From contig OZ025743.1 in NCBI GenBank assembly GCA_964019335.1, positions 186,001 through 250,000 on the forward strand: DNA of 64,000 nucleotides. Direction: 5' to 3'. The position numbers and the translations under genes are program-made. The DNA comes from Diplonema japonicum (lineage: Eukaryota; Protista; Euglenozoa: Diplonemea). Positions 1,812-63,200 of the stretch are shown here, in pieces (the stretch's first letter is position 1; every line of letters starts with the position of its first letter). The notes beneath the pieces were generated by a model. That model had not been told where the DNA came from. It saw nothing but the letters and a program-made list of their open reading frames with translations, and did not search any database.

Positions 1812-1970
1812 TTTTTTTTTCTTTTTTTTTTCTCTTCCCTCCCCGCTTTTTTTTTTTTTTTTTTTTTTTTGATTTTTCCTTTGTTTTGCAAAAAAAAAAA
1901 AAAAAAAAAAAGGGGGTATTCATATGTTGGAAAACACACGGGGGAGAAAAAAAAAAAAAAAAAAAAAGGG

Positions 1971-18552: not shown

Positions 18553-18719
18553 TTTTTTATTCTTTTTTTTTTTTTTTTTTTTTTTTTTCACTCCGTCTTT
18601 TTTTTTTTTTTTTTTTTTTTCCCCCACCCCCACACCCCATCCAAAAAAAAAAAAAAAAAAAAAAAAAAGGACGATCAGGACTATTTCTTGTTCCCCACAA
18701 AAAAAAAAAAAAACTCCCC

Positions 18720-20351: not shown

Positions 20352-20407
20352 TTTTTTTTTTTTTTTTCGAAATACAAAAATTCCCAGCCTCCCCTCCCCA
20401 CCCCTCG

Positions 20408-20477
<70 letters not shown>

Positions 20478-20514
20478 GTGGTATGAATGAAAAAAAAAAG
20501 AATTTTTTTTTTTT

Positions 20515-27750: not shown

Positions 27751-27954
27751 TTTGCAATTCCGCAAAGAGCCTTTTGCAGGTGGGTATCCTGTGTGGGTGT
27801 GTTATGAAATCATATAAAAAAGGTACCAAAAACAAGAAGAAAAAAACTTGGGGCGAGGGGAAGTAAAAAAGTTAGAAAAGGGAGAAGAAAAGAGGGGGGG
27901 GGGGGGGGGGAATATATATATGAGTTAAAAGGAAGTCTTTGTGAGACGCCCCCT

Positions 27955-42270: not shown

Positions 42271-45200
42271 TTAAAACACAGGCACACACGGCGCCGCCAG
42301 AGGGTAAGGCATATAACTAACCAAATCTGTGAAATCTTCCTTTCCCCTCTCCCTCTCGACACCTTTTTCTCCCAATACCAAAACAGCACCACCACAAGTC
42401 AAAGCATTGGCATAAACACGAGCCTTACCAATATCCTCTTGCAACGCATGTATATGCACCACCCTTGCATCCACAGGCCCCGAAATGTGCGTCGCTGTGG
42501 GCCGGTTCTCAAGGACAAGAGAAGAATTATCTGTCGGGATAATATGTGCTACGGTAGGAGTAGGTATGGAGTCGGTGAGAATGGCCAGCTCTATGGATTG
42601 TGTTGATGCTGTTGTTGTTGTGGTGGTGGCTTGTTGCTCCCGTTGCTTGCTGTCAATCAAGTTCGCCAGCGCCTCCACGGTCGAATATTCGAACAGATTT
42701 TGCAGAGTCAAAACCCCCGTTTTGAACCCGAACGATTTCTTCAAACCGCTCACCACCGCCACCGCGCTCAGCGACGACCCACCGATTTCGAAGAAATCCG
42801 TTGTTTTCCCCACAGACACCCCACCTGCCCCTATCTGCATCTTGTCCTTCCAAATTTTCTCGATTATCCTTTCCGTTTCTGTAGTTAACTGAACACAGTC
42901 ACCACGTGCTTCAAAATCAGGTGACGGTAGTTTTTTCCTGTCTAGCTTACCCGATACTGTCAGTGGGAAGCTGTCCAAGAACACCCATGCAAGGGGGATC
43001 ATGTAAGCAGGCAGTTTTGAACGAAGGGTCGTGAGAAGGACTGCCTCCGACACCGGAGGCACAACATAGCCCACCAACCTCTTGTCGGAAACCATGACAA
43101 GCGTGTCCTTCACAGAGGGTATCTCCCTCAGAACTGACTCTATCTCGCCCAGTTCTATCCTTAGACCCCGGATCTTCACCTGGTGGTCGATCCTTCCCAG
43201 GAACAGAACATTCCCACTACGTGTGTACCTCCCTAGATCGCCAGATTTGTACATTTTTTTCCCGGTGTGAAATGGGTCGGGTATGAACCTTTCAGCAGTT
43301 TGTCCAGGTAGGTTAACATAGCCCTTTGCCACGCCCACTCCGCTGAAATATATCTCCCCGATGACACCAGGGGGTACCGGGTTCAGGCTTCTGTCGAGTA
43401 TGTACGTTCTATAATTCCCCAGCGAGAAACCGATGGGCACTTGATGCGACTCCCTTCCGTTGCACAAATGGATGTTCGTGGTGACGGAGACCTCGGTTGG
43501 CCCGTATGAGTTGTAAAAACGCCTCCAAGGTGTGAACCATTCCAGCATAACCTCCACGGGCAGTGCTTCTCCCATGAGGATCATGGTGGTCACGTCTCGA
43601 AGTGTCATTTCAGTGGGTAAAACAGAGAGAACGCTGGGAGACAGTGTCACTGTGTTGATCTTGTTGTCGTTGAGGTACTGAACAAGATCGTCGCCAAGAG
43701 GTTGTTGTGATGTGTCTCCCATGTACAGAGCACCGCCCACGACAAGCGCCATGAAGATCTCGGAGAACGACGAGTCGAATGTCAGGGAGGCGAACTCCAT
43801 CACACGTTCAGTGTGGTCGAACTGGTACACATCCTTCTCCGCGAAGATCATGTTTGTGATCCCCGCATGGTGGATCTGCACGCCCTTCGGTTTACCGGTC
43901 GAACCAGATGTGTATAGTATGTAAGCAAGGTCGTCCCCTGACCCTTCCGCGGGGCACGGTTGTGGTTTGTTCCTTCCCATTTCTCTCACATCGGTCAGGT
44001 TTGTTGATGGCATTCCGTCGGGTGCAGCGATGTTGTTCTCCGTCAGCAGGATTTCCATGTCGCAATCGTCCATGATGTACCTCAGCCTGTCAGCGGGAAG
44101 CGCGGGGGAAAGAGGGATGTACACCATACCGGCCGTCCACACGGCAAGCATCGCGGTGATGCCGTGGTGTGTTCTGTTCGTCAGAACACCGATCTTCGAC
44201 TTCTCCGGAAGGTTCAAGGATCGGATCCCCGATGCAAGCTGCATTACGACATCGTACAGCCCAGCGTATGTAAACGTCTCTTCCCCGTTGACAATCGCTG
44301 TGCTGTCAGGGTATTGCGATGCCGTTTCAAAGACAAGATGGTGAAGCCGTTTCGTGCTGCACGGCCAGTCCTTCCCCGTGTCGTTCCATTCCACGATTGC
44401 TCGGTGAGATTCCTCTGGGGAGGCCATAGGGACATTCTGCACGGGTTCTGCGGGGGATGCGAACAGCACGTCGCTCAGTCTTCTGTACCCCGCGGCCATC
44501 TGCACAATGGTCTCCCTCTCGAACAGATCGGTGTTGTACTCAAACCCGAATTTCACGCAGCTTCCAGAGTCCGTTGCCGTTACGTTCAAATCGAACTTAG
44601 ATCCTTCGGGTGCGATGTCAAGCGGCTTCAATGTAACACCACCCTTGTGCATCTCACTGCACACATCAGATGCAACATCGAACATGAGCTGGAACAATGG
44701 GTTCTTCGAAGGGTCACGTTCAAGCTGCAGTGCGTCGAGGACCGACTCCAACGGGACGTCTTGGTTGGCCTGCGCGTCGTGCATTGCGGTGCTCACCTTG
44801 TTGACGATGGCTGTGAAGTCCGTCGCGCTGCCCGACATGTCCAAGCGGACGGCAACGGAGTTCACGAAGAACCCAACCATCTTCTGCGTTGCCGTCTTGC
44901 CTCTGTTCGCAATCGGAACCCCTACCACAATGTCGTCCTGCCCCGTGTACTTCCCCACCAGCACGGCGAACACAGACATCAGCATCGTGAACATCGTCAC
45001 ACGGTGTGTCTTCCCGTATTCTCTGATACGATCCAACACAACACCATCGATGGTGATTGTCTCCGTTGCACCGTTGAAGGTCTGCATGGTGGGCCGCGGG
45101 TGGTCCAACGGGAGCTCAACAACCGGCGCGTCACAAAGTGTATCCTTCCAGTACTGAAGCTGCGCATTAAGCACTGCTGGAAGCGTCTCTCGCTGCCATG

Positions 45201-48200
45201 CTGCGTAGTCGACGTACTGCAGAGGGAGGTCGGGCAGCATGTGAGGCTGGTCGACAACAAGCGAGTGGTACACAGTGGTCAGCTCCTCCAGCAGGATACC
45301 CACAGACCACCCATCTGATATGATGTGGTGCATTGTCAGAATAAACACGTGGCGTGTGGCGTCGAGCACAGCAAGCTTCGCGGTGAACAACGGGCCCTCT
45401 GAAAGGACAAACTGCATCCCAGCTGCCTTCTCCGCCATCTCTACTGCAGCGTCCATTCCCGACACCTTAACCACTTCTAGCTGCATGGTGTCGTTCATCT
45501 CTTCGATCGTCTGGTAAGGGAACCCGGCTTCTGTCGTTCTGAACACTGCGCGCATGCCTTCGTGGCGTTCCACCATAATACGGAACGCGGCTTTGAAGAC
45601 GTTGGGGTCTATCATTCCGTGAACCTCCATCGCGCACGGGATGTTGTAAGCACAGCAACCTGTAGAGTCCATCTGGTCCAGCACCCACAGGCGCTGTTGT
45701 GCAAATGAGACAGGTAGCTCCCTGCCACGCGCTGCTCTGTCGAGCTTGGTGATGTCAGGCACGACATTGTGCAGCCTGTCCTGGGCAACGACTTCGGCCA
45801 GGCCTCTGATGGTCGGGTTGTCGAATAAGTCCTTCAGCTTGATCTCTTTTCCAAACACGTCGGACAGCTCTGCCACCAGCTTCACTGCTAGTAGCGAGTG
45901 GCCTCCCAAGTCGAAGAAGTTCCCTGTAGCACTCACAGATTCCCTCCCGAGGATCGCTGTCCACACCGTGTGCACGGCTGCTTCGGTCTCGCCCTCAAGC
46001 TCCACACATTGTTCTTCTTCATACATCGGAACAGGGAGCCTCTTCCTGTCTACCTTTCCACCAGTGTATGGGAACCCTTCCATCACAACATACGCCGAGG
46101 GAACCATGTACCCTGGCAACGATGCTGCTAAACACTCCTCCACAACCTCGAGGTTTGCCTCGCCTAAGATATACGCCACGATGCGCTTGTCACCAGGGTT
46201 GTCCTCCCTTGCCATGCAGATGGTCTCCTTCACGTTTTCGCATGAGCGGATCAAGGCCTCGATCTCCCCGAGCTCGATCCTGAAGCCTCTGATCTTCACC
46301 TGGTGGTCGATCCTTCCGAGGTACTCGATAGTTCCTGTCTCACCCTGCCTCACCAAGTCCCCTGTCCTGTAGATCCTGTTCGAGGGGTCTAAGTCCTCAG
46401 AGGGGGACAGGAAGGGATTCGGGATGAACTTCTCCTTCGTGAGGTCGTCCCGGAAGAGGTAGCCAGTTGCAAGCTGCGCTCCCCCGACACACAGCTCCCC
46501 CGCCACCCCTTGCGGGACCAGCTGCATCTCCGACGACACCACGTAGCAGGTCACGTTCGAGCGAGGGACCCCAATCGGGGTGCTCGTCGCTCCCGCCGCG
46601 AGCTCCCAGGTCGTTGCGATCACGGTGTTCTCGCTGGGACCGTACGCATTCACCAGGCGTCGTCTCCTCCCCGCCTCCGCGTTCCGTCCCCACTTCTCCA
46701 CCGTTCCCACAGAGCAAGCCTCCCCACCGGTCACAATCGTCTCCAGCTCCCCAAGACCTTCCGCAGGAAGAACTGCCAGAAGAGACGGTGGGAAGAGGAG
46801 AACGTTCACCCGCTCCCGACGGAGGAGCCTCTCCAACTCCACCCCGAGAAGCTCCTCCTTCTTCCCCATGCACAGGGTCGCCCCGCTCGTCAGCGTCGTG
46901 AACACCTCCCACACAGACGCATCGAAGCAGTAGGTGCTGAACTGCAGCATCCTCATCCCCTCCCTCGTCACCTCGTTCTCCTTGTTGTCCACCACCAGTG
47001 AAAGGAGACCTCTGTTCGTGAGAACAACACCCTTCGGCTTCCCTGTCGACCCAGAGGTGTAGATCACGTAGGCGGGGTCGGCCAGCTGAGTGGCAACGTG
47101 CGGGAAGTCGTGTTTATCGCTATGCTCCAAGGTATCCACATGAACAGCGTGGGCGGAGGGCGGGAGGGCGATCAGGTTGCTGAGATCGGATGTTGTCAGC
47201 AAATGCGTTGCTTTCGAATCAGCCAGCATGTAGTCGAGCCTGTCCTTCGGGTATGTCGGATCAAGGGGGAGGTAGGCAGCACCCAACTTCAGGGCAGCTA
47301 AGATCGAGGTGATCATGTACGGGCCTCTGTGAAGCGAGAGACCAACAACAGAACCTCTGCACACACCGTGCGTGTGGTAAAGAGTGGCAGCAAGACGCTG
47401 CGCCTCGGCGTGCACGCTGGCGTAGGTGAGGTGCGTGTCGTAAAAAGACACGGCAAGGCAGTCTGCGTATTCATCAGCAACGCGAAGGAGGTGCTCGTTG
47501 ACGCTGCTGACTTGCGGCAAAGACACGGCGGTCCTGTTCAGCTCCACTGCGAGGTGGTGGGCCTCGCTGTTGGTCAACATCATGAGATCCGCAATGAGAG
47601 CATCAGGGTTGCCTGCCACAGACTCCATGAGTGTTGCGTAGTGTTGCAGCATTCTCTGCATGGTGCTGGCGTCCCACAGGTCCGTGTTGTACTCCAAATT
47701 CAAGTACAGCCCGTCTGCAGCGTCGTTGGTGGAGAACTCAATGTCGAACTTCGCAACATGGGACTCCATCTCCAAAGGTGCTACTTCCAATCCGCCTCGC
47801 GGTTGCACCTCGCTGCTCACTGAGTCGTTCTGAAGGAACACGATCTGGTACAGTGGGTTCCTACTGAGGTCCCTCTCGGGGCGTAGGTCTTCAACGATAC
47901 TTTCGAACGGCATTTCTTGATGGGCAAAGGCCTCTAAGCAAACAGCGCGCACCTTATCCAGAAGGGACTTGAAAGTGTCCTTCTTGGGGTCGAAACCTGT
48001 GCGGAGTACAAGCGTATTGACAAAGAAGCCGATCAGATCCTGTGTCTCTGGCTGGTCGCGCCCCGCCACCGGCGAGCCTACCACAACGTCGTCCTGCCCG
48101 CTGTATTTGTAGAGCAGCACTTTAAACACTGCCAGCAGCGTCATAAAGGAAGTGCATCCAGCTGCCTTTCCAATGCTGTGCACCGCTGCAGATATCTCGC

Positions 48201-51200
48201 TGTCGATCCGGAGTCCTTCTGCTGCGCCGTTGAAGGTCTGCACCATGGGTCTGGACCTGTCGGTGGTGATCTCCATGGTGGGAAGACCTGACAAAGCGTT
48301 GCGCCAGTACCCAAGGAGGGTGTCCTTTACACGCGGGTCCTGCAGCCAGTTGCGCTGCCACACCGCGTAATCATGGTACTGCACCGCAAGGGGTGGGAGG
48401 GTCTCACATGCCGTCTCGTCGGTTGCACAGTTGTAAAGCGTGAAGATGTCGTTCATGAGCACAGACAACGACCACCCGTCGCACACGATGTGGTGGATGC
48501 ATATCAACAGCACGTAGTCCTCCTCGCTCGTTTGGATCAGGCTGACCCGTAGAAGTGGTCCGGTCGCCAAGTTGAATGGTGTACCAACCTCTTTTTGGAC
48601 CAAAGCCAACACCTGTGGCTCCACCGGAAGTGACTCTCTAAGGTCGAAGCGGTTGACAGCGAACGAGATCTCATCGGCAGGCTGCACCCTCTGCACACCG
48701 TTTTCGATTACCGTTCGCAGCACAGCGTGCCTCCTGACAAGAAGATCAAAGGCACCACACAGTACATCAGGCTGCTTCAACCCCTTCACCTTGACAGCAA
48801 TCGGCATGTTGTACGCAACGCTGTCCGGGTCCATGAAGGTGAGGATGTACAGACGGTGCTGAGCGTGTGACAGAGGGTACTCCGTTTGCTGCGGCTGGGC
48901 GGTGATGGGTGGGATCTCGAGTTCGTTGGATGAACCAAGTATCTCGGCCAACTGCTTCACGGACGGTGCCTCAAACAAGTTCTTCAGGCTGAGCTGCAGA
49001 CCGAGCTCCTTCTGCACCGCGGCGATCAGTCTGATGGCAAGCAGCGAATGGCCGCCGATGTCGAAGAACGACACGCCGCACCCCACTGCCTCCACACCAA
49101 GCATCCTGCAGAACAACGCGTGCAGCTTCTCCTCAACAGGTGTTGCTGGGGCATCGCTTGCATCGCCAGTCCCCAGTCCGCCCCATGTCGGCTCGGGAAG
49201 CTTCTTCCTGTCTATCTTCCCGCTTACGAGCATCGGGAACCTTTCCAACACCACGACTGTGTTCGGCACCATGTACCCAGGGAGCTTCTCTCGCACCCCG
49301 GACACAACTTCCGACTGGTCGACGACGTTGCCCTCATTTTGCACGACGTACGCTACTATCCTCTTCTCGCCTTTGCTGTCCTGCTTCACCACCACGCAAG
49401 CTTCGCGTACAGAGGTCGTGCTGCTTCGCACGGCGTTCTCGATCTCCCCAAGCTCAATGCGCAGCCCTCTGATCTTCACCTGGAAGTCTATCCTGCCCAC
49501 GTACTCCACAGCACCGTTGGAAAGGTGCCTGCAAAGATCGCCTGTGCGGTAGAGCCTTGTCCCGTTGACAGTCGGGAATGTTGTGTGTGTCTGCTTGGGT
49601 TTGTTGAGGTACCCTCTGCCAAGCTGCACACCGGCAATGCACAGTTCGCCGAATGCGCCAATAGGAGCGGGGTTGAGGTACTGGTCAAGTATGAACGCCT
49701 GCGTGTTCGCAACAACCCACCCGATCGGGACCGTTCCCTTCATGTTCTTGTGGCACTTGAACCAAAGCACCTCGATGGAAGTCTCCGTAGGGCCGTACAG
49801 GTCGTATAGCAGGCAGTTCCTGAACCTCTCGTGGAAGTCGTTCGACATCTTAACTGTCAGAGCTTCGCCTGATGCCCAGGACAGCCTCACACTGTCGAGT
49901 TTAGGCGCCCACTCCTCTCCCACTACTGAGCAGAACACATCGAGCATGGAAGGGACGAAGTGCAGCACTGTTACCTTGAACCTGCCCACAAACTCTGCAA
50001 TGTACTGCGGGTCAGAGTGGCCTCCTGGCTTGGTATACGCCAGCTCTGCGCCGTCCTTCAGCGGCCAGAAGGTCTCTGCGACAGACACGTCAAAGACGTA
50101 GGGTGTCTTCTGCATCACAACGTCGCCTGCTTTGAGTGGGTGACGTGCTGCCAACCACTTGATCCTGTTCACCGTCCCAGAGTGCTGCAACATCACCCCC
50201 TTCGGGAGCCCCGTCGACCCCGAGGTGTAGATGATGTAGGCGAGGTTCTGCGCCGTTACGTATGACACTGGTCGCTCATCGGGCATGCTAGCTACCTCTT
50301 CCCATTCAGCATCGACGGCCAGCACAGTCACGTACTGTCCCATAGAAGGCAGGTTTGCAGCCACGGCCCCTTGCGTCAAAACAACAGGCGGTTTGCAGTC
50401 GTTGACAATGTACTCAGTTCGCTGCGACGGGTTCGAAGGGTCGACGGGCACGTAGCACCCGCCTGCTTTCAGCACCGCCAGTTGCGCTACCAACATCTCC
50501 ACAGACCTCTCGAAGATGATGACCACGGCTGTCTCAGGACCGATACCCTGTGTGTGCAACCAGTTAGCCAGCTGATTAGCCTTGTTGTCCATTTCCCTGT
50601 AAGTCAGGGGTTCTGTCATGCCCTCCACGATGACACATGGCGCATCAGGTTCGCAGTCGACACGGTGCTCGAACATCCCGTGCAAGGTGGTGCCCTCGCC
50701 GTCGGAGTATTCTTCGTGAGTGTCATTCCACTCGACTTGTGCCACGTGGCGGTCTGTGTGTGTGCTCATCTCATATGAGTAGATGCACTTCACTGGGTCA
50801 TCCGACACCTCACGCAGCACTGACATGTAGGAGTTCAAGAACTTCTCTGCAGTGCTCCTCAGGAACAGGTCTGTGTTGTACTCCAGCACCAGCTGCAGCC
50901 CGCCGGAAGCCATCTCCTGTGCGAAGAGCGTCAGCTCGAACTTTGTTGTAGTCGTTGTCCTCTGTATGGGTGTTGGACCTCCCTCGCTGATGCCCTTGGC
51001 TTCCGCATCTTGCAGTACGAACATAACTTGGAAGAGAGGGTTCCTGCTCATGTCCCTTTCAGGCTGCACTGCCTCGACTACCCTCTCGAAGGGCACGTCT
51101 TGCTCGTTCAGGGCACCTATCACAGTGTTGCGCAGCGATGCGAGGTACGACAAAAACGTGGGGTTGCCCCCTGTTCGCTGTCTGATGACAAGCGTGTTGA

Positions 51201-54200
51201 TGAAGAAACCGATGAGGTTCTCTGTTGCAGCACTGCCACGACCTGCCACAGGCGTGCCCACCGAGACGTCGTCTTGGTTGGAGTACCTGCAGAGCACAAC
51301 GTTCCACGCTGCTAGCAGCACCATGAAGAGCGTAGCATCGTGGGTGCTGGACAGCCGCTTCAGACCATCAGCCACGTTGGGTGCAATGCCGGCCTTGACT
51401 GCCGACCCATTATAGGTCTGCAGCAGAGGTCTCTTGTGGTCTAAAGGCAGGACTAAAGGCGGTGCGCCTTCCAAGTGGGTTCTCCAATATTGCAGTTTGC
51501 GGTGCAGAACGTCTCCCTGGAGCCACCCGCGCTGCCAAACGGAGTAGTCGGCGTACTGTACAGGGAGAACCGGAAGCTGCAGGTCTTCGCCAGTGTATAA
51601 CACAGCGAGCTCTCTGCCTAGGACCTTCATGGACCACCCGTCTGCAACGATGTGGTGTATGTTGACGGACAGTACGTTCTGCACACCGAAGCTGATGACC
51701 TTCACGCGCAACAGGGGGCCCTTCGCGAGGTCGAACACATAGTCCGAATCCTTCGCAACGATCTCTTCAAGCTCCGCCTCTGTTTCTACTTCTGCGGTCA
51801 CGAACAGCGGTGGCAGTGTGTCGAGCACCATCTGCCTCCCGGTGCCCTCGTCGTCGCTCACGAACACAGTTCGCAGTACTTCGTGCCTTGCGACAAGTTC
51901 GAAGAATGCTCTCTTCAGCTTGCCCTGGTCCAGAATGCCCTCCCACTGCAACACGTTGTGAATGTTGTAAGCACTCCCTCCACCTTCCAGCCTGTCGATC
52001 ACCCACAGCCTTTGCTGGGAAAACGACAACGGGAACGTGTCCTGCCCGTCGAGCCTGTCCACGGTCAGCGGTGGTGCCATGTCCGTGTTGCCCTCGCTCA
52101 TGGACACCACACGAGCCATGCCACGTACGGTGGGCGCTTCAAAGAACTCCTTCAAAGAAACCTCAACGCGTATCTTGTCCCTCACCCTTCCCACCACAGC
52201 GACAGCAAGCAACGAGTGGCCTCCCAAGTCGAAGAAGTTGGCTGTCACGCTAACCTTCTGAGCTCCCAGTACTTCCATCCATATCCCTTGCACTGCTAAC
52301 TCAACAGCATCAGCAGCCTCTACATAGTCACCTTCAAGAGAGTTGTAAGACTCAGGTACAGGGAGCCTCTTCCTGTCGACCTTGTTCCCAACAGTCATGG
52401 GGAAGGCGTCCAGGGAGACGAAGGAGGAAGGAACCATGTAGAAAGGAAGCCTGTCAGAAAGGTAAGAGGTGAGACCTGTCGCCACCGAGTCAGAGGAGGG
52501 GTTCACGAGGTAGGCAACGATGCGCTTGTCACCGGGCACGTCCTCGCGAACAAGGCACAGCGCGTCGTCGAAGCCCCCGAACTGCTGCATCAAGGCCTCG
52601 ATCTCCCCGAGCTCGATCCTGAAGCCTCTGATCTTCACCTGGTGGTCGATCCTTCCGAGGTACTCGATAGTTCCTGTCTCACCCTGCCTCACCAAGTCCC
52701 CTGTCCTGTAGATCCTGTTCGAGGGGTCTAAGTCCTCAGAGGGGGACAGGAAGGGATTCGGGATGAACTTCTCCTTCGTGAGGTCGTCCCGGAAGAGGTA
52801 GCCAGTTGCAAGCTGCGCTCCCCCGACACACAGCTCCCCCGCCACCCCTTGCGGGACCAGCTGCATCTCCGACGACACCACGTAGCAGGTCACGTTCGAG
52901 CGAGGGACCCCAATCGGGGTGCTCGTCGCTCCCGCCGCGAGCTCCCAGGTCGTTGCGATCACGGTGTTCTCGCTGGGACCGTACGCATTCACCAGGCGTC
53001 GTCTCCTCCCCGCCTCCGCGTTCCGTCCCCACTTCTCCACCGTTCCCACAGAGCAAGCCTCCCCACCGGTCACAATCGTCTCCAGCTCCCCAAGACCTTC
53101 CGCAGGAAGAACTGCCAGAAGAGACGGTGGGAAGAGGAGAACGTTCACCCGCTCCCGACGGAGGAGCCTCTCCAACTCCACCCCGAGAAGCTCCTCCTTC
53201 TTCCCCATGCACAGGGTCGCCCCGCTCGTCAGCGTCGTGAACACCTCCCACACAGACGCATCGAAGCAGTAGGTGCTGAACTGCAGCATCCTCATCCCCT
53301 CCCTCGTCACCTCGTTCTCTTTGTTGTCCACACACAGGTTCACAAGCCCGCGATGGCTCAAGGCCACCCCCTTCGGCTTCCCTGTCGACCCAGAGGTGTA
53401 GATCACGTAGGCAGGGTCTTCCCCGCTCCTCAAACCCTCCACTTCTGCTGCTTCCACAGGTGTCACCACCACCCCTTCTGCACCAGAAAACACAGACTCC
53501 AAAACCAGCTTCCTTGCCTCTCCGGTCTCCACGCACTCCCTGCAGCGTTCAGAGACCACCACCAAGGGAACCTTGGAGTCCTCAACCATGTAGTCGAGCC
53601 TGTCCTTCGGGTATGTCGGGTCGAGGGGAAGGTAGGCTGCCCCCAGCCCCACGATCCCCAGAACCCCGACGATCATCAAGGGGGAGCGTTCCACGCAGAT
53701 GGCCACAAGGTCCCCCTTCCTCACCCCTGCCGAGGCGAGGCTGCGGGACATGCGTCCTGCCATCTTCCGAAGCCGCTCGTACGACAGGCTCTCTCCGTCG
53801 GAGAAGCGCAGTGCAAGAGCGTCGGGCTGCTCCGCACACTTCGCCCAGATCCACTCGTCGATCGTCTCGTACTTTGTTGTCGGCACTACCGTCGTTTGGT
53901 TCCACTCCTTCACGGCACAGTGCTTCTCCTCGTTGCTGAGGAAATCGTGAACCATTGCCTCAGGGTTTTCCGAGACGCATACCATGAGGTTGTGGTAGTG
54001 TGCGAAGAGCCTCCTGACGTCCTCCGCGTTGAAGAGGTCGGTGTTGTATTCCGCAGTGAAGGCAACACTACCGTCAGCAGACTCGACGGCACCGATGGAC
54101 ATGTCAAACTTTGCGATCGTGCCGTCTGTCTGGAAGGGTGCCATGGCGAGGCTGCCGAGCGAAGCGTCTGCAGCCGACGCAGACACGTTGGTCATGGCGA

Positions 54201-57200
54201 AGGCAAGCTGGAAAAGGGGGTTCCTGCTGAGGTCACGGTCCGTGTGGACCGCTTCCACGATCTTCTCGAAGGGCACATCAGGGTGTGCATAGGCGTCCAG
54301 ACAGGTTTTTCTGACTCTTCTGCAGATCTCGTTGAAGTCAGCACCCTCCAAATCAGTCCTCAACACCAACATGTTGACGAAGAACCCGATAAGGGGCTCG
54401 GTCTCCTTGCGCACCCTGTTTGCGATACCGGTGCCAACAACAATGTCCGTCTGCCCTGACCAATGTCTCACAAGGAGCTTGAAAGCAGCTAGAAGAGTCA
54501 TGAAGGTTGTGCAGCCTTGCTTCTTGCCGACTTCTGTGAGCTTGGTGACATGCACGGCGTCTAAGGTCATTGTCTCGAGGGACCCGCTGAAGGTCTGCGT
54601 TAGCGGTCGTGGCTTTGTGGGCATCTGCACGGTGGGAAGGCCGTCCAGTGTAGCTTTCCAAAAGGCAAGCTTCTCCTCTAGCACCGCTCCTGAGAGATGT
54701 GTTCTCTGCCAAACTGCAAAGTCAGCATATTGAACCCGCAGCTCGGACAACCCCGTGTGCGTGCCGTTGATTAGTGAAGTGTACATCAATGACAGGTCCT
54801 TCAGCAGGATGCTCAGCGACCACCCGTCGGAGACGATGTGGTGCATCACAAGGACTACAACGTGTTTGTAGACGCCCGTCTTCACAATGCTGGCACGGAA
54901 GAGCGGTCCTTCAGTTAGGTTGAAAGGCTTGTTGATCTCCGATGACACAAACTGCGACAGCTCACCTTCTGCATCCCAGCTCTCCTTGTGCGTCCAGTCG
55001 TGGTAGGCAACCTTGAGAGGTGCGGTGCTTGCGTCTTGTACCACTTGCATGGGCTTCCCACTTACCTCAGTGAACACTGTCCTCAAGGACTCGTGTCTCT
55101 CGTGTAAATTTTTGATTGCATCCACAAACTTGTCTTTGTCCAGCACCCCGTCCAGTGTCATCGCAGCAGGAATGTTGTAGGCTGTGTTTCCCTGCTCCAG
55201 TCTGTCCAGCACCCACAGCCTCTGCTGTGTGTACGAACAAACAACAGGCACCGACTTGTCAACAGCTTCGATCGGTGCCAACGTCAACTGCTTCGCGTCT
55301 TCCACGCACTTCGCAAACTCCATCAGCACAGAGCTTTCGAATATGTTCTGCAGCTCAATCTCCGCCCCCAAGCTGCTCTTCACCGCAGAGACAAGACGCA
55401 CCGCAGCTAGAGAATGGCCACCGATCTCGAAGAAGTCGTCCATTGCAGACACACTGCCTACGCCAAGGATCGTTCCCCACAACTGCGCTAGTACCTTCTC
55501 CGTCTTTGTTGTCGGCTCAACATATCCCTGCTGCTTGGCAGCATGGAGGTCCGGCTCCGGAAGCTTCTTCCTGTCGTACTTCCCAGTTGCACCTCTCGGG
55601 AAGTCTTGGAGGATGACAAAAGCATGGGGAACCATGTATCCCGGGAGGCTGGCGGAGAGGAAGGTGTGGAGGTCTTGGGAAGAGAGGGTCTCCCAGTGTT
55701 CCCCTGCGAGGATGTAGGCGACGAGCCTCTTGTCCCCAAGGGCGGTCTCCCTCGCGAGGCAGATGGAGTCGTGGACCTGAGGGTGCTCCGAGAGGCGCGC
55801 CTCGATCTCCCCGAGCTCCACGCGGTAGCCTCGGATCTTTACCTGTTGGTCCACCCTCCCCAGGAAGTCGATGTTCCCGTCCGGGAGGTACCTCCCCAGG
55901 TCCCCGCTCCTGTACATCCTGTCCCCTTCCCTCCCGGTGAAGCGGTTCGGGACGAACACCTTCGGGGTGAGGTCGTCACGCTTCCTGTAGCCGCGAGCCA
56001 CCTGCCTCCCCCCACACACGATCTCCCCGGCCACCCCGACAGGGAGCGGGTTCAGGTATTTGTCCACCACGTACAGCTGCAGGTTGCAGTTCGGACGACC
56101 AGCAGGTGCCCCCTTCCCGTACCCGTCGGCCCCGCCGCCGTCGTGCGGAACCACGAACCAAGACACCTCGCACGAGCACTCCGTAGGCCCATAGGCGTTG
56201 ATGAGCTTTCGGGTCGGGGTCGCCCACTTCTCCACGATCAGATTGATACACGGTTCCCCGGCGCTCACCAGCACCCGCAGGCGCGGGCACCCGACGCTCT
56301 CCATCGTCTTCAGCAGAGCAGGAGGGAACATCCCCGCATCCACCTCGTTCCGCTCCATGAACCCCACCAGGTTGTCCCCGAGGAGCTCCTCCTTCGCAGC
56401 CATCCACAGGGTCGCTCCTGTCATGAACGCCATCCCGAACTCCAAGATCGACGGGTCGAAGCTGTACGTGTAGAACTGAAGCATGTTGTCCCCGGGACGA
56501 AGCCCGTACTCCCTGTTCAGCGACACGCAGTTGTTGAGAGGGCCCTGTTGCATCACTTCCACACCCTTCGGCCGACCGGTCGACCCTGACGTGTAGATCA
56601 CCATGAACAGGTCTTTCAGAGACCTCCCCTCACGAGAGGGGTTCTCCCTCTTCCCGCTGCTCTTCTTCTTCTTCTTCTCACACTTCGTCTCGAAGAAGGC
56701 ATCAAGGAGAATCACCGTCTCCGCACCGTGTCCCTCGCACACCGTCTCCGCGAGGCGCGAGTCGCTCACCAAGAACTGCAGCCCAACATCTTCCATCTGG
56801 TAGACGAGCCTCTCCCGAGGGTAGCTCGGGTCCAGCGGGGTGTATGCCCCGCCAGCCTTGTGCACCGCCAGAAGAGCAACGGGGAGCCTCCAGCTTCGCT
56901 CCACGCACACCCCGACCACAGTGTCCCGCTGCACCCCGGCTTCAATCAGAGCGTGCGCCAGCTCGTTCGCCCGCCCGTTCACCTCGCTGTAGGTGAGGTG
57001 CTCTTCTTCGAACACCACGCACACCTGGTCCGGCATCTCCTCCACCCGCTCCTCGAACTGCGCGTACAGCGGCTTCGAAGGCAGCTCCAGCTCAGTGTCG
57101 TTCCACTCGTACAGAACCTGGTGGCGCTCAGCTGGGGTCAAGATGGTGACGCGGCTGATGGGTGTCTCAGGCGCAGCTGCGAGTTGATCCAAGCACATGG

Positions 57201-60200
57201 CGAAGTGCCCTAGCATGCGGTCGGCCGTGGAAGCGTCGAACAGATCGGTGTTGTGCTCCAAGAAGACCGTCATGCCATTCGCGTGCTCTTGGCAGATGAA
57301 AGAAAGGTCCCACTTGGCAACATTCCCCTCCGGCACCACCAAGGTGAGGTTGACACCCGGGATGGCCACCTCACGTTTCTCTTTCTGATGCATCATGAAC
57401 ATGACTTGGAAGAGAGGGTGCCTGCTTGCATCCCTTTCAGGCTTCAACGTCTCAACAAGCCTGTCAAAAGGTAAGTCTTGATTGGCGTAAGCATCGAGGC
57501 AGCTGCCCTTTACCCTGCGCACGAGCTCCACGAAGCTTGGTACATCGCTGACGTCAGTGCGCATGACTTGCATGTTTACGAACAGACCCAGCATCCTGCT
57601 AGCCTCTGCCTTGGTTCTATTTGTTATAGGCGTGCCTAGCACAATGTCGTCTTGACCAGAGTAGCAGTGCATCAGAACGTTCAGTGCACTGAGCATCGTG
57701 ATGTACGTACTCGCACCAGTCCTGATCGAGATCGCTTTCATCTTCTCGACAACACCAGCAGCCAGGTCAATAGATGCGTTTGCACCCACAAAGGTCTGCT
57801 TCGGGGGGCGCTGCCTGTCGGTTGGGATCTGGAGCGTTGGCAGGTCTGCGAGACGGTGCGCCCAGTATGCTTCTTGTTCTTGCATCTCTTCGGTGAGGCT
57901 TCGCTGCCAGACAGCGAAGTCCGCGTACTGCATCTGCGGAGCAGGCTCGAGAATTCCTTCTTTAGTGTAGAAATGCGTGTACAGGCTTTGAATGTCCGCG
58001 AAGAGAATGGGCACGGACTCACCGTCCGAGATGATGTGGTGCATTGTGAGGAACAGCGTTGCCTGCTTGTCAGAAACAACGACCAGCTTCACGCGGAACA
58101 TAAACTCAGCGCTCATGTCGAACGGCTGCCCTTGTTGCACAGAGATTTCGCGGAGAATGCTGTCCTTTTCCGTTTGTGGTTTGCCTCTCACATCGACCAC
58201 GTCAAGGGGTTTGAACGTCCATGGGTGCACAACTTGCACAGGGCCCTCCTCAGAATCATCCCTGAACATGGTGCGCAGCGGCTCGTGGCGCTTTGTCAGC
58301 TCGTTCAGAACCGTCTCGATGAGCTCGGGTTTCACCTCACCTTCAAGGCAAAGCTCCATGGGAGCGAGGTACGCACCCGAGTCGTCCTTGCTAATCCTGT
58401 CCAGCAGCCAAAGCCTTTGCTGCGCGAAGGACATTGCCATTTTCGTAGGCTCGCCTTCTTTTCTGAATTGTTTTACCATGACCTTCTCGCTTCTGCCCTC
58501 CAATGCGATCTTGTCCACTACACCAGCCACGCCTGCTACAGTCGGCTGCTCGAAGAACTCTTTCAAAGGAACCTCAACGCCGAACTGCTCCTTGATGCGC
58601 CCGGTGAGTCTCACTGCTAGTAGCGAGTGGCCTCCCAAGTCGAAGAAGTTGGCTTTGACGCTAACCTTCTCCGTGTTCAGCAGCTCCTTCCACAGTGTCT
58701 CCAACCCCCTCTCTGTTTCACTCGTAGGTGGCACGTATTCACCTTCAAGAGAGTTGTAAGACTCAGGTACAGGGAGCCTCTTCCTGTCGACCTTGTTCCC
58801 AACAGTCATGGGGAAGGCGTCCAGGGAGACGAAGGAGGAAGGAACCATGTAGAAAGGAAGCCTGTCAGAAAGGTAAGAGGTGAGACCTGTCGCCACCGAG
58901 TCAGAGGAGGGGTTCACGAGGTAGGCAACGATGCGCTTGTCACCGGGCACGTCCTCGCGAACAAGGCACAGCGCGTCGTCGAAGCCCCCGAACTGCTGCA
59001 TCAAGGCCTCGATCTCCCCGAGCTCGATCCTGAAGCCTCTGATCTTCACCTGGTGGTCGATCCTTCCGAGGTACTCGATAGTTCCTGTCTCACCCTGCCT
59101 CACCAAGTCCCCTGTCCTGTAGATCCTGTTCGAGGGGTCTAAGTCCTCAGAGGGGGACAGGAAGGGATTCGGGATGAACTTCTCCTTCGTGAGGTCGTCC
59201 CGGAAGAGGTAGCCAGTTGCAAGCTGCGCTCCCCCGACACACAGCTCCCCCGCCACCCCTTGCGGGACCAGCTGCATCTCCGACGACACCACGTAGCAGG
59301 TCACGTTCGAGCGAGGGACCCCAATCGGGGTGCTCGTCGCTCCCGCCGCGAGCTCCCAGGTCGTTGCGATCACGGTGTTCTCGCTGGGACCGTACGCATT
59401 CACCAGGCGTCGTCTCCTCCCCGCCTCCGCGTTCCGTCCCCACTTCTCCACCGTTCCCACAGAGCAAGCCTCCCCACCGGTCACAATCGTCTCCAGCTCC
59501 CCAAGACCTTCCGCAGGAAGAACTGCCAGAAGAGACGGTGGGAAGAGGAGAACGTTCACCCGCTCCCGACGGAGGAGCCTCTCCAACTCCACCCCGAGAA
59601 GCTCCTCCTTCTTCCCCATGCACAGGGTCGCCCCGCTCGTCAGCGTCGTGAACACCTCCCACACAGACGCATCGAAGCAGTAGGTGCTGAACTGCAGCAT
59701 CCTCATCCCCTCCCTCGTCACCTCGTTCTCTTTGTTGTCCACACACAGGTTCACAAGCCCGCGATGGCTCAAGGCCACCCCCTTCGGCTTCCCTGTCGAC
59801 CCAGAGGTGTAGATCACGTAGGCAGGGTCTTCCCCGCTCCTCAAACCCTCCACTTCTGCTGCTTCCACAGGTGTCACCACCACCCCTTCTGCACCAGAAA
59901 ACACAGACTCCAAAACCAGCTTCCTTGCCTCTCCGGTCTCCACGCACTCCCTGCAGCGTTCAGAGACCACCACCAAGGGAACCTTGGAGTCCTCAACCAT
60001 GTAGTCGAGCCTGTCCTTCGGGTATGTCGGGTCGAGGGGAAGGTAGGCTGCCCCCAGCCCCACGATCCCCAGAACCCCGACGATCATCAAGGGGGAGCGT
60101 TCCACGCAGATGGCCACAAGGTCCCCCTTCCTCACCCCTGCCGAGGCGAGGCTGCGGGACATGCGTCCTGCCATCTTCCGAAGCCGCTCGTACGACAGGC

Positions 60201-63200
60201 TCTCTCCGTCGGAGAAGCGCAGTGCAAGAGCGTCGGGCTGCTCCGCACACTTCGCCCAGATCCACTCGTCGATCGTCTCGTACTTTGTTGTCGGCACTAC
60301 CGTCGTTTGGTTCCACTCCTTCACGGCACGGTGTTCTTCCTCTTTGCTGAGGAAACTTAGAGTCGACAGGGGCTGCCTGGGGGAAACCGTGACATGTTTG
60401 ATCATAGCAAGCAGGTGCGCCATAAGCTGCGACACAAAGTCGTTGCTGAAAAGGGCGGTGTTGTAGTCAATGGTGAACTCGACGCCCCCCGCGTCCAGCT
60501 CAAGTGCAGCGAGTGACAGGTCAAACTTGGAGATCTTGTTCTCGATGTCTGTGCTGGAGAACTGCAGCCCGGGCAGCGTGATGGCCTCCATGGGGTTGTT
60601 CTGCATCGCGAAGGTGGTTTGGAAAACTGGGTTCCTGCTGAGGTCGCGCTCGGGCTGCAGCACCTCAACTACCTTGTCGAAGGGCACTTCTTGGTTCTGA
60701 TGCGCCAACACAGACTTCTCCTTGACGCTCTTCACTATGTCAGCAAAGGTGCACCCCACGGGGAACCCAGTCCTGTACACAAGGGTGTTCACAAACAGGC
60801 CAACAATGGGCTCGATCTCCGTTCTATTCCTCGACGCGATAGGAGTCCCCACCACGATATCGTCCTGGCCGCAATAGACATGGAGGAGGGTGCTGTACGC
60901 AGCCATCAGCGCCATAAACGGCGTGCATTTCGCCTCGGAAACGAATTTTTTGAGCTGCTCGTGATCTTCCTTCTCTAAGAGAACTGTGATGGAGCGGCCC
61001 TCGAAGGTTTGAACAGAAGGGCGGGGGTACGTTGTTGGGAGCTGAAGGACTGACGAACCTTGCAGCTCGGCGACCCAGTAGTTGAGCTGCTGGTCGATGT
61101 TGACGGCAGCTGTGTTACGCTGCCACCATGCGAAGTCCGCGTACTGGATAGGTAACGGGGGCAACGAGAGGGGTGCGCCTGTCATGACCGAACGGTAACA
61201 CTCACAGAGGTCAGACACAAGGACACCAAGAGACCACCCATCAGTGATGACGTGGTGGGTGTTGATCATCATCACGTGGCTGTCCGGTTCTGTTTTGATG
61301 ATGCAAGTTCTCCATAGAGGGCCTGTGTTTAGATTGAATTGCCACGCTGCCTCCTCAGCCATGATGTCAGCTGTCTTTCCAGCGTCGCCACTTGCATCAT
61401 GCGAAACCACCACCACGCTGCTCTCTAGCTCGCTAAACGCGAGACAAGGCTCTCCGCCGGCCTCGATGGTGATCCTCGCTGTGAAGATCTCGTGGCGTGA
61501 CGCGAGCATCACCAGAGCTTTCCTCAGCGTTGCCACATCAAATGCATCGCCCTTCACTGTCACTGCGATCGGCATGTTGTACGCACTGCTTGTTCCATCC
61601 AGCTGGTCGAGCACCCACATCCTCTCCTGCGCGTACGACACGGGCAGCACAATGCTACCGTCACGTGGCTGCACTTCGATCTGCACATCGTTGTGTGCAG
61701 TGCCGCAAGCAACACTTGCAGCGACATCTGCCATCACAGGCGACTCGAACAAGTCCTTCAACGCGTACTCGACCTTGAACTCCTTCCTAATCATCGATAC
61801 CAGTTTCACAGATGAAAGCGAGTGGCCACCCATATCGAAGAAGTCAGAGTCACGCGACACCCTCTCAACACCGAGCAGCGAGCACCAGAGTTCCGCAAGA
61901 CGTGTCTCGATGCTCCCCACAGGCTCGACGTACTCGCCGTTCTCATGTTCTGTTTGCGGCTTTGGCAGTGCCCTCCTGTCAGTCTTCCCTTGTGCAGTGA
62001 GGGGCCAAGCCTCGAGGTGGACGATGGCGGAAGGGACCATGTAGGCGGGGAGCTTGGAGTCGAGGAGTGTGTTGACAGAGGGAGCGGCGTCGGCGTCGGC
62101 CGTGTGCCCCCTCGCGATCACGTAGGCGACGATCCTCTTGTCCCCAGGGATGTCCTCCCTGACGAGACACAGAACGTCCGCTGTCTCTGGGTGCTGGCGA
62201 ATCACGTTTTCGATCTCCCCGAGCTCGATCCTGAACCCCCTGATCTTCACCTGGAAGTCCACCCGCCCGATGTACTCCACCGTCCCGTCCGCGAGCCACC
62301 GCCCCACGTCCCCGGTCTTGTACAGCCGCCCGCCCTTCCCGGCCGCTCCGAACGGGTCCGCCACGAACCTCTGCGCCGTCAGCCGCGGTTGGTTCTGGTA
62401 CCCCCGCGCCAGCTGGTACTTGCCCCCGACGTGCAGCTCCCCACACACCCCGAGGGGCACCGGTTCCATCGCCTCGTTCAACAGGTACATCGTGAAGTCC
62501 TTCAGCGGGGTTCCGATGTTGCTCTGGAAGGCCCGCGACATCACCTCCTCCGTGATCTCCTTGATCGTCACGTGAACAGTTGTCTCTGTGATCCCGTACA
62601 TGTTCACCAACCGGGGCTGCTTGTACCCGAACCTCTCGAACCACTCCTTCAGGTTAGCCAGTTCCAACTTCTCTCCCCCGAAGACCACGTACCTCACTTG
62701 TAGTTCTTTCTTCTTCTTCTTCTTCTCCTTCTTCCCCTCCTCCTCCTCCTGTCCTTCCCCGAGAGCGTAAGGAATGAGTTGGTAGAAAGCAGAGGGTGTC
62801 TGGTTCAACACCGTCACCCCCTCATCCACGAGGAGCTCGTAGAAGTCGGGTGGGGATCGAGACACCAAATACGGAACAACCACAAGCTTCCCCCCGTAGC
62901 AGAGGGCCCCGTACAGTTCCCAGACACTGAAGTCGAAGGCGGAGCTGTGAAACATCGTCCAGCAGTCCCGTTCTCCGAACCCGTAGAATTCCTCCGATGC
63001 CCGCAGCAGGTGCACCACGTTTCGGTGGCAGATGAAGATCCCCTTCGGCCTTCCTGTGGAACCGGAGGTGAAGATGATGTAGCACAGGTTCTTGCTTGTC
63101 GCCTCCCTCTTCTTTGGGGCAGCTTCCTCCATCACTCCGCTTCCGCTGTTCTCTCCCTCCCCGCCCTTCTCCATGTAGAAGAGCTCTCCCTTGAAGTCGA

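What the first reader, a model, noticed from the sequence alone, without database searches (positions are those of the whole stretch)
46250..60329. The same A domain recurs in every second module (2, 4, 6), predicting an alternating peptide
Seen: the A domains of visible modules 2 and 4 appear nucleotide-identical over ~1.59 kb, and module 6 shares the ~740 bp specificity core. The flanking C and T domains, and A1/A3/A5/A7, are all divergent. The pocket code read by eye is DAWLVGAVIK (hydrophobic, Phe/Leu-like, not an exact known code to me). Inference: the product pattern is Thr-X-Y-X-Z-X-W, an alternation reminiscent of amphipathic or membrane-active peptides. It arose by recent A-domain swapping rather than whole-module duplication.
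Basis: partly seen in the sequence, partly recalled or inferred. Interest (0 to 1): 0.85.

Follow-up and report, generated by a model that had tools for sequence, protein, structure and literature searches.

The report
Identical adenylation cassettes in giant NRPS
Inside one enormous peptide-assembly-line gene of a marine protist, the parts that choose each amino acid have been copied letter for letter between otherwise very different modules, a clean eukaryotic example of a process already known from bacteria.

Summary
Window 52328-53918 and 58739-60329 are identical over 1,591 nt, and 46250-46980 matches both over 731 nt. Short-read contigs from independent studies break at these edges, with word depth of about 1:2:3:2:1 in the clearest run, so this is not a polishing artefact.

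The window holds only the last seven modules (12-18) of one 21,455-codon open frame: FAAL-ACP-KS-AT-KR-ACP plus 18 C-A-T modules. It lies in what is very probably the nuclear genome of Diplonema japonicum. The repeated A domains are those of modules 13, 15 and 17, all with the code DAWLVGAVIK.

The pattern is gene-wide. A2=A12, A8=A14 and A6T6=A10T10 are also 100% identical, A1/A5/A11 about 99%, and A3/A7 are mosaic. All 18 C domains are only 25-40% identical at the protein level. Tract edges cluster at the C-A linker "EWNxT" motif and just after A10.

Shared tracts have raised GC at silent sites. I read this as recurrent, probably GC-biased, intragenic gene conversion of A-domain cassettes.

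"Alternating peptide" applies only to residues 13-17 of an 18-mer, and the substrate is unknown. This is a known kind of event in a new host.

The parts
42271..64000 (-). 3' 21.7 kb (modules 12-18 and the stop codon) of one 21,455-codon PKS-NRPS open frame. The frame continues upstream of the window to G000:C96:292638.
   Evidence: Open frame 42274..106638 in window-extended coordinates. Pfam finds C, A, T and AMP-binding_C domains. There are 18 C domains in one frame. The N-terminus is FAAL-ACP-KS-AT-KR. The TAA stop is at 42271-42273.
58739..60329 (-). A-domain cassette of module 13 (C-A linker 'AVKEWNQT...' through A10 plus about 20 codons), identical to module 15.
   Evidence: 1,591-nt exact run. 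529 identical codons with their edges shown. Code DAWLVGAVIK. It is a canonical NRPS A domain by comparison with PDB sequences.
52328..53918 (-). A-domain cassette of module 15, identical to module 13.
46250..46980 (-). Core of the module 17 A domain (between A3 and A4, to just after the A8 hinge), identical to modules 13 and 15. It carries 9 of the 10 specificity positions.
   Evidence: 731-nt exact run. A 731-nt contig at triple depth in X1 and X2. Edges are ...CVDNK|ENEVT... and ...LGEIEAL|mqqf.
46027..47553 (-). Whole A unit of module 17: a chimera with its own outer parts and an imported core.
   Evidence: Outer parts are 43-46% aa identical to A13 and the core is 100%. GC3 is 0.69/0.68 in the outer parts and 0.815 in the core.
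55553..57146 (-). A cassette of module 14 (code DPLMVAACEK), 100% identical to module 8, which lies outside the window.
   Evidence: 1,594-nt exact run with 74804-76397 in extended coordinates. 530 identical codons. Double depth in X2.
61955..63600 (-). A cassette of module 12 (Thr-type code DFWNVGMVHK), 100% identical to module 2, which lies outside the window.
   Evidence: 1,646-nt exact run. 548 identical codons. The code is listed as Thr in PMC9113097.
60361..61701 (-). C domain of module 13 (unique).
   Evidence: HHVITDG motif. 39% and 34% aa identity to C15 and C17.
53944..55293 (-). C domain of module 15 (unique).
   Evidence: HHIVSDG motif. 39-40% aa identity to C13 and C17.
47587..48927 (-). 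C domain of module 17 (unique).
   Evidence: HHIVCDG motif. 34-40% aa identity to C13 and C15.
58528..58740 (-). T domain of module 13.
   Evidence: LGGHSL motif. 56% and 48% aa identity to T15 and T17, against a background of about 36%.
52117..52329 (-). T domain of module 15.
45799..46011 (-). T domain of module 17.
49189..50742 (-). Single-copy A domain of module 16 (DVAHWSLIEK, a distant relative of the Ser-like A3/A7).
   Evidence: 58% aa identity to A3/A7. GC3 is 0.72.
42919..44400 (-). Single-copy A domain of module 18 (DSSTIMSVTK). It is followed by T18 and a tail of about 150 aa with no recognised release domain.

Best explanation
The window holds modules 12-18 of a single intron-less nuclear gene of about 64 kb, very probably from the diplonemid Diplonema japonicum. 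The gene encodes a hybrid lipopeptide synthetase: FAAL-ACP-KS-AT-KR-ACP followed by 18 C-A-T modules. Within this gene, A-domain cassettes are copied non-reciprocally between modules by homologous recombination, that is, intragenic gene conversion. The C-domain scaffold stays unique to each position. A full cassette runs from the conserved 'xExHxxLxEWNxT' motif at the end of the C domain and start of the C-A linker to the 'GKxDRxxLPxP' motif just after A10. One family carries its T domain along as well. Module 17 has received only the Acore segment from A3/A4 to A8. These conserved motifs are the only places where unrelated modules resemble each other at the DNA level, so tracts start and end there. 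Once two modules share a cassette, further conversion keeps them identical. The process is probably recurrent and GC-biased, not a single recent swap. The functional result is that modules 13, 15 and 17 should load the same unidentified residue X, so the predicted product ends ...Thr12-X13-c14-X15-g16-X17-f18. Shown here: the identities, the tract edges, the domain architecture, the read support and the GC contrast. Inferred: the mechanism, its recurrence, the direction of transfer (A13/15 type into A17) and any statement about the substrate.
For: (1) Exact tracts of 1,591 and 731 nt in the window. Gene-wide, A2=A12 (1,646 nt), A8=A14 (1,594 nt) and A6T6=A10T10 (1,919 nt) show 0 differences. 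A1/A5/A11 differ at only 12 codons. A3/A7 are identical for 842 nt and then mosaic. (2) All 18 C domains are 25-40% aa identical pairwise. A-domain identities are strongly bimodal, either about 100% or 22-51%; A3/A7/A16 are the only intermediates. (3) Five independent N-terminal edges fall within 13 alignment columns (507-519) at the C-A linker motif. Three C-terminal edges fall at columns 1103-1114, just after A10. The module 17 tract ends right after the A8 block, the most conserved nucleotide stretch (79% background identity). (4) GC3 of shared tracts is 0.76-0.84, against 0.65-0.72 for single-copy A domains and 0.64-0.745 for C domains. Within A17, the core is 0.815 and its own flanks 0.69/0.68. 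Within A3/A7, the shared part is 0.843 and the rest 0.70. At four-fold degenerate sites, shared tracts are 0.68-0.78 and unshared A parts 0.50-0.64, with complete separation (Mann-Whitney p=0.0003). Against C domains (0.53-0.68), p=3e-5. (5) T domains of same-type modules are more alike than background: 43.8% against 35.6% aa, leaving out the identical 6/10 pair. A17's own N-terminal flank is closest to A13/15 (43% against 22-37%). Both fit an old relationship that has been repeatedly refreshed. (6) The sequence is real. Independent short-read contigs and copy-number depth steps support it, and the assembly is HiFi-based. (7) No copy of the X cassette exists elsewhere in the genome, so donor and recipient are both inside this gene. 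(8) The process is established for NRPS and PKS genes: concerted evolution (PMC4256081), A-domain and Acore recombination (PMC8097286; PMC7486941) and conserved linker motifs acting as recombination hot spots (PMC11428043).
Against: No orthologue from another species could be found. The classical proof of concerted evolution, paralogues clustering by species and not by position, is therefore missing, and nothing can be dated. Zero differences in four families could also come from one recent burst of copying. Raised GC in shared tracts could reflect the origin or codon selection of those cassettes, not biased conversion. Edge clustering may reflect selection for working chimeras as much as mechanism. 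Expression and product are not shown: none of the runs found is recorded as RNA.
Confidence: 0.75

Rival explanations
1. One-off recent A-domain swaps. A few discrete recombination events recently replaced A domains of different specificity, changing the peptide sequence. There is no ongoing homogenisation.
For: Identity is limited to A domains and the edges are sharp. Module 17 is a visible partial replacement on a divergent backbone. Such swaps are documented in bacteria.
Against: Four separate families all have exactly 0 differences over 1.6-1.9 kb, which is unlikely for independent events of different ages. Silent-site GC is raised specifically in shared tracts. Same-type modules keep extra similarity in their T domains, and A17's own flank resembles A13/15. 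The two views are not exclusive, because a first seeding event of this kind is needed anyway.
Confidence: 0.2
2. Whole-module (C-A-T) tandem duplication, followed by fast divergence of C and T while A was conserved.
For: NRPS multi-modularity is generally thought to arise by module duplication (PMC9205934 discussion). T domains of same-type modules are slightly more alike than background.
Against: C domains of modules that share an A type are no closer than any random pair: 34.6% against 33.1% aa, with a maximum of 40%. The A tracts are identical even at synonymous sites. Purifying selection cannot keep 1.6 kb free of silent changes while the neighbouring C domain diverges to about 50% nt identity.
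Confidence: 0.02
3. Assembly or polishing artefact: the copies really differ and were homogenised or collapsed in the assembly.
For: Near-identical repeats of 1.6 kb are a classic source of such errors.
Against: Short-read de Bruijn contigs from a 2020 study and a 2024 study show the same sequence with no variant letters. They branch at or within 30 nt of the tract edges, and the 2020 run has 1:2:3:2:1 depth. The published assembly used 102x HiFi reads, which span these repeats. All 21,455 codons stay in frame.
Confidence: 0.02

Closest known systems
NRPS family of Ca. Endobryopsis kahalalidifaciens (PMC11428043)
   Same: Intensive recombination leaves stretches of near-identity that tend to start at a conserved motif in the C-A interdomain. 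A domains do not covary with their C or T partners. The authors propose that conserved linker motifs act as recombination hot spots.
   Different: That system is 20 separate pathways in a bacterial symbiont. Its identities are about 92-96%, its stripes usually end inside the T domain at the T1 motif, and the specificity unit is A3-A6. Here everything happens inside one eukaryotic gene, the copies are 100% identical, and most tracts end just after A10, before T.
'Linker + A domain' substitution unit and natural recombination hot spots (Calcott et al. 2020, PMC7486941)
   Same: The hot spots lie between the C and A domains and on both sides of the binding pocket (A2-A4 and from A5 onward). [quoted passage not shown] The full cassettes here start at that place, and the module 17 tract starts between A3 and A4.
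   Different: That work rests on statistical breakpoints across bacterial genera and on engineered constructs. It does not describe identical intragenic copies.
Acore subdomain exchange in bacterial NRPS (Baunach et al. 2021, PMC8097286); mcyB1/mcyC replacement in microcystin synthetase (PMC2174460)
   Same: Recombination targets A domains alone and C domains do not co-travel. Module 17's A3/A4-to-A8 tract keeps its native C-A linker and Asub, as that paper's rule predicts.
   Different: [quoted passage not shown] The five full cassettes here include most of the linker and the whole Asub, and one includes T.
Concerted evolution in modular PKS/NRPS (Medema et al. 2014, PMC4256081; named extremes are the mycolactone PKS and syringopeptin NRPS)
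   Same: Internal recombination homogenises sets of same-function domains within one synthase, and can do so for some domain types and not others.
   Different: As I recall, in those extremes most domain types are similar because of recent module duplication. Here the scaffold is ancient (C domains 25-40% aa identical) and only the A cassettes are homogenised. The host is a eukaryote.

Membership tests
NRPS adenylation domain (ANL superfamily, PF00501 + PF13193) | Pfam AMP-binding and AMP-binding_C matches above the curated cut-off | tested here: met
   953 and 810 bits for AMP-binding, 79 and 110 bits for AMP-binding_C.
NRPS adenylation domain (ANL superfamily, PF00501 + PF13193) | Core motifs A3, A4, A5, A7, A8 and A10 with the A10 lysine, in modules 13, 15 and 17, including the chimeric A17 | tested here: met
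   A17 keeps TSGSTGKPK, FDAS, NAYGPSE, YRTGD, GRIDHQVKI and PYTGGKVD.
NRPS adenylation domain (ANL superfamily, PF00501 + PF13193) | Full-length similarity to solved NRPS A domains | tested here: met
   LgrA E=3e-153, and GrsA-PheA (1AMU) E=1e-93 over residues 11-516.
NRPS adenylation domain (ANL superfamily, PF00501 + PF13193) | Amino-acid-dependent adenylation activity and substrate identity | not testable with these tools
   Only the code DAWLVGAVIK is available. No literature match was found.
Linear C-A-T elongation modules of a type I NRPS | C domain with HHxxxD(G) and a carrier domain with a GGxS serine in every module | tested here: met
   Variants are HHAVSDE in C6 and HHIIADA / HHIITDA in C4 and C11.
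Linear C-A-T elongation modules of a type I NRPS | A terminal release domain (TE, R or Ct) | tested here: not met
   The last 309 aa give only AMP-binding_C and PP-binding hits. The tail of about 150 aa has no hit. The next gene downstream is a protein kinase.
Intragenic gene conversion / concerted evolution of synthase domains | Paralogous domains far more alike than their flanks, identical at silent sites, with sharp mosaic edges | tested here: met
Intragenic gene conversion / concerted evolution of synthase domains | Paralogues cluster by species and not by position when orthologues are compared | not testable with these tools
   No relative above about 43% aa identity was found, and none in metagenome contigs.
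Intragenic gene conversion / concerted evolution of synthase domains | Compositional footprint of biased conversion, confined to the shared tracts | tested here: met
   This is consistent with biased conversion but other causes are not excluded.
Acore subdomain swap (module 17 only) | Exchange confined to Acore, with the native C-A linker, Asub and Asub-T interface kept | tested here: met
   The tract covers columns 729-1015 (between A3 and A4, to just after A8). The outer parts are 43-46% aa identical to the donor type.
Fungal peptaibol synthetase (considered because of the 18 modules, the PKS-type start and the roughly 63-kb ORF) | C-terminal reductase, fungal host and Aib-type A domains | tested here: not met
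   There is no reductase. The start is FAAL-ACP-KS-AT-KR, not KS-AT-ACP. The genome is a 62.5-Mb euglenozoan-type assembly. Thr- and Ser-type codes are present. The defining features of the family are from my memory.

The most novel reading that the evidence does not exclude
A eukaryotic nuclear megasynthetase whose A domains behave as interchangeable cassettes on an ancient, position-specific C-domain scaffold. Ongoing GC-biased gene conversion keeps the cassettes letter-identical. This would be the first case where biased conversion is seen shaping an NRPS, and the first giant lipopeptide assembly line described in Euglenozoa. It would also be a natural experiment showing that one 'linker + Acore + Asub' unit works behind two or three C domains that are only 30-40% identical. 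The product would be an undescribed lipopeptide of 18 residues.
Probability: 0.4. Interest if true: 0.65.

Novelty: new member of a known kind. Interest (0 to 1): 0.5.

Why it matters
NRPS engineers still debate which piece of a module can be exchanged without breaking the assembly line, and whether C domains police the amino acid. This gene gives six natural replicates in one protein. The same A unit, cut at the same two conserved motifs, sits behind C domains that are only 25-40% identical. This supports the view that the A domain with its linker is the exchange unit and that C domains are not strict gatekeepers.

The gene also shows that the process runs in a eukaryotic nucleus and leaves a GC footprint there. 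It flags a very large orphan lipopeptide synthetase in diplonemids, an abundant but little-studied group of ocean protists. All of this depends on the enzyme being active, which has not been shown.

Tried and rejected
(1) Peptaibol synthetase. The 18 modules, the PKS-type start and the roughly 64-kb ORF suggested it. I rejected it because there is no reductase, the loading is FAAL-type, Thr- and Ser-type codes are present, and the host is not a fungus.

(2) Bacterial contaminant or chimeric contig. I rejected this for four reasons:
- The gene lies inside a 374-kb contig between eukaryotic genes: a kinase, an ankyrin-ART protein, biotin carboxylase and ETF-alpha.
- Its codon usage correlates with that of its neighbours (r=0.87).
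- Its best bacterial relatives are only about 40% identical.
- It is present in runs from three studies of the same organism.

(3) Substrate from the literature. None of the pocket codes except the Thr one occurs in the searchable papers. My recollection that DAWLYGAVMK is a Leu code (8 of 10 positions shared) is memory only.

(4) Orthologues for dating. A genome-contig scan, a 5.8-billion-protein word search, a full HMMER scan of 1.84 billion representatives and a metagenome scan gave nothing closer than about 43%. There are caveats. The representative list is ranked by summed bits, so a short, highly similar fragment could be hidden. Proteins of 1,870-4,500 aa are poorly covered.

(5) Expression. 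None of the runs found is recorded as RNA. The uneven depth in X1 and the partial cover in the P3 runs hint at RNA but prove nothing.

(6) Typing C domains as LCL, DCL or dual E/C from motifs was inconclusive.

(7) One literature search was too broad and gave nothing useful.

Read laying was given 5,901 letters.

Full report
**Observation**

The large gene in the finding lies on the minus strand. A self-comparison and base-by-base counts give two exact tracts. Window 52328-53918 equals 58739-60329 over 1,591 nt with no mismatch. Window 46250-46980 equals both of them over 731 nt.

Motif mapping places the long tract from the C-A linker to about 20 codons after the A10 lysine. It is therefore a whole A domain. 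The short tract runs from between motifs A3 and A4 to just after the A8 hinge. I aligned all A domains and read the ten specificity positions from the FDxS, LxxGGE, NxYGPTE and A10 anchors.

**Artefact test**

Eleven public runs from four studies hold this stretch or part of it; seven of them, from three studies of one organism, hold half of its words or more.

All runs were Logan short-read contigs. In X1 (2024) and X2 (2020, a different study) the contigs end at or within 30 nt (the contig overlap) of 52328 (X2 only), 52589, 53319 and 53918. No variant letters occur inside the tracts. In X2 the word depth runs 17.3, 30.7, 55.5, 36.1/31.8 and 15.4, and then 36.6 over the A domain of module 14. 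This is what one, two, three, two, one and two identical copies predict.

The published assembly that matches this genome in size (62.30 Mb against 62.5 Mb here) is Diplonema japonicum YPF1604. It was built from 102x PacBio HiFi reads with hifiasm (PMC13598402). Earlier notes of this scan name the same organism. I checked that naming only through the genome size. The polishing-artefact explanation is rejected.

**What the gene is**

The window is G000:C96:186001-250000. I fetched 60 kb upstream. The frame stays open for 21,455 codons, from 42274 to 106638 in window-extended coordinates.

Pfam finds AMP-binding (FAAL-like), ACP, KS, AT and KR domains and the first C domain in the first 2,250 residues. 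A second ACP-like segment (LGIESIS) precedes C1. Eighteen C-A-T modules follow.

No TE, R or terminal C domain is present. The last 150 or so residues have no match.

The neighbouring genes are ordinary eukaryotic ones: a PDZ-kinase, an ankyrin-ART protein, a BCD1/cold-shock protein, biotin carboxylase and ETF-alpha. The spacers between genes are poly-T and poly-A runs. Codon usage of the NRPS correlates with that of its neighbours (r=0.87).

The best relatives anywhere are bacterial NRPSs at roughly 35-43% identity. A metagenome scan found none. I found no paper that mentions an NRPS in diplonemids.

**The pattern is gene-wide**

A self-comparison of the whole gene and a codon alignment of all 18 modules show that every recurring A type is near-identical between its copies:

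| Pair or family | Identity |
|---|---|
| A13 = A15 | 1,591 nt, 0 differences |
| A2 = A12 | 1,646 nt, 0 differences |
| A8 = A14 | 1,594 nt, 0 differences |
| A6-T6 = A10-T10 | 1,919 nt, 0 differences, T domain included |
| A1 / A5 / A11 | 12 variable codons in about 580 (7 synonymous, 5 not), in small clusters |
| A3 / A7 | identical for 842 nt, then mosaic |
| A17 | core only (731 nt) |

By contrast, all 18 C domains are 25-40% identical to each other at the protein level. No pair stands out. A-domain identities are strongly bimodal, either about 100% or 22-51%; A3/A7/A16 (57-78%) are the only intermediates. This excludes recent whole-module duplication.

The order of A types is a-Thr-S-d-a-b-S-c-e-b-a-Thr-X-c-X-g-X-f.

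**Tract edges**

Five independent N-terminal edges lie within 13 alignment columns (507-519). All are 1-12 residues before the W of a conserved "xExHxxLxEWNxT" motif at the end of the C domain and start of the C-A linker. Three C-terminal edges lie at columns 1103-1114, right after "GKxDRxxLPxP" (A10). The 6/10 pair runs on to the end of T. The module 17 tract ends immediately after the A8 block.

A profile of nucleotide identity between modules of different A type shows local peaks at the linker motif, at A3, at A8 (79%, the maximum) and at A10. These are the places where unrelated modules offer some homology.

**One swap or continuing conversion?**

No orthologue is available, so this rests on internal evidence. 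Four points favour continuing conversion.

1. Four families with exactly zero differences are not what independent events of different ages would leave.
2. Silent-site composition differs between shared and unshared DNA.
   - GC3 is 0.76-0.84 in the six shared cassette types. It is 0.65-0.72 in the four single-copy A domains and 0.64-0.745 in the C domains.
   - The contrast repeats inside single domains. In A17 the imported core is 0.815 and its own flanks are 0.69 and 0.68. In A3/A7 the shared part is 0.843 and the rest is 0.70.
   - At four-fold degenerate sites, shared tracts are 0.68-0.78 and unshared A parts 0.50-0.64, with complete separation (Mann-Whitney p=0.0003). Against C domains, p=3e-5.
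   - This is the footprint expected from GC-biased gene conversion acting for a long time on exactly these tracts. Other causes are not excluded.
3. T domains of modules that share an A type are more alike than background: 43.8% against 35.6% without the identical pair. T13, T15 and T17 are 48-56% identical to each other.
4. A17's own N-terminal flank is nearest to A13/15: 43% against 22-37% for all others.

I therefore favour old paralogous A(-T) units that are repeatedly homogenised. Module 17 is caught partly converted, with the A13/15 type as donor.

**Comparison with what is known**

- Concerted evolution by internal recombination in PKS and NRPS genes is established, and it can affect some domain types and not others (PMC4256081; PMC9205934).
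- Bacterial surveys find that recombination targets A domains independently of C domains. They report hot spots between C and A and on both sides of the pocket. A "linker + A domain" unit cut at the very end of the C domain works in engineering (PMC7486941).
- In Ca. Endobryopsis kahalalidifaciens, near-identical stripes start at a conserved C-A interdomain motif and tend to end in T (PMC11428043).

Module 17 here obeys the Acore rule. The five full cassettes match the "linker + A" unit. They differ from the Acore trend because they carry most of the linker and the whole Asub.

From memory only: the XU fusion point of Bozhüyük et al. 2018 lies at a WNATE motif in the same linker.

**Verdict**

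The mechanism is a known one: A-domain gene conversion and concerted evolution. It is seen here in an unusually clean form, across the whole gene, in a eukaryote. The added features are a silent-site GC footprint and the context of a very large orphan PKS-NRPS.

The substrate of the repeated domain is unknown. The pocket is hydrophobic. Thr at module 12 is supported by a literature code match (PMC9113097). The "amphipathic peptide" idea remains speculation. I rate interest as moderate (0.5) and the class as a new member of a known kind.

Noticed in passing
window 42271-64000 and upstream to G000:C96:292638 (minus strand): One open frame of 21,455 codons: FAAL-ACP-KS-AT-KR-ACP plus 18 C-A-T modules, with no introns and no release domain. 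It is the only mega-NRPS in the genome. The best relatives are bacterial at about 40% identity. No paper on diplonemid NRPS was found.
   Followed up: partly
window 42274-42700 (minus strand): The C-terminal tail of about 150 aa after T18 has a poly-Thr run and no Pfam match. How the peptide is released is unexplained.
   Followed up: partly
extended coordinates 68144-70062 and 80936-82854 (G000:C96:254144-256062 and 266936-268854): Modules 6 and 10 share an identical A-T unit. Their T domains alone carry FGGDSI; all others are GGHSL-like. C10, C11 and C17 have an odd C1 motif (AQHQIY / AMQRIY / AQHRLY). These may mark D-residue positions. There is no E domain in the gene.
   Followed up: partly
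extended coordinates 78701-79542 and 91469-92310 (modules 7 and 3, outside the window): The Ser-like A3 and A7 are identical for 842 nt, up to just before specificity position 299, and then mosaic. Their codes differ at that position (DVWHASLIEK against DVWHGSLIEK).
   Followed up: partly
window 24775-27801 (minus strand): A gene fusing an NAD:arginine ADP-ribosyltransferase domain (PF01129) to a long ankyrin array. The 102-nt (34-aa) units of the array appear as tandem repeat families D1 and D2.
   Followed up: no
window 1812-1913, 10991-11092, 18556-18665, 20401-20510, 36209-36318 and others: Repeat family D3 is not a mobile element. It is made of the long poly-T and poly-A runs that fill the spacers between genes, directly upstream of start codons.
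   Followed up: partly
G000:C94:69432-70541, C107:101155-101859 and C19:23091-23873: Three further, much smaller open frames (1,637-1,990 aa) with a condensation domain lie elsewhere in the genome. None holds a copy of the X cassette.
   Followed up: no
window 50500-56400 in runs X1, X6, X8, X9 and X11: Depth in X1 is strongly uneven along single-copy parts (484 against 84). Four runs of about 65 million letters from one 2022 study hold only 10-59% of the words. This would fit RNA libraries and low expression, but the runs are not recorded as RNA.
   Followed up: no
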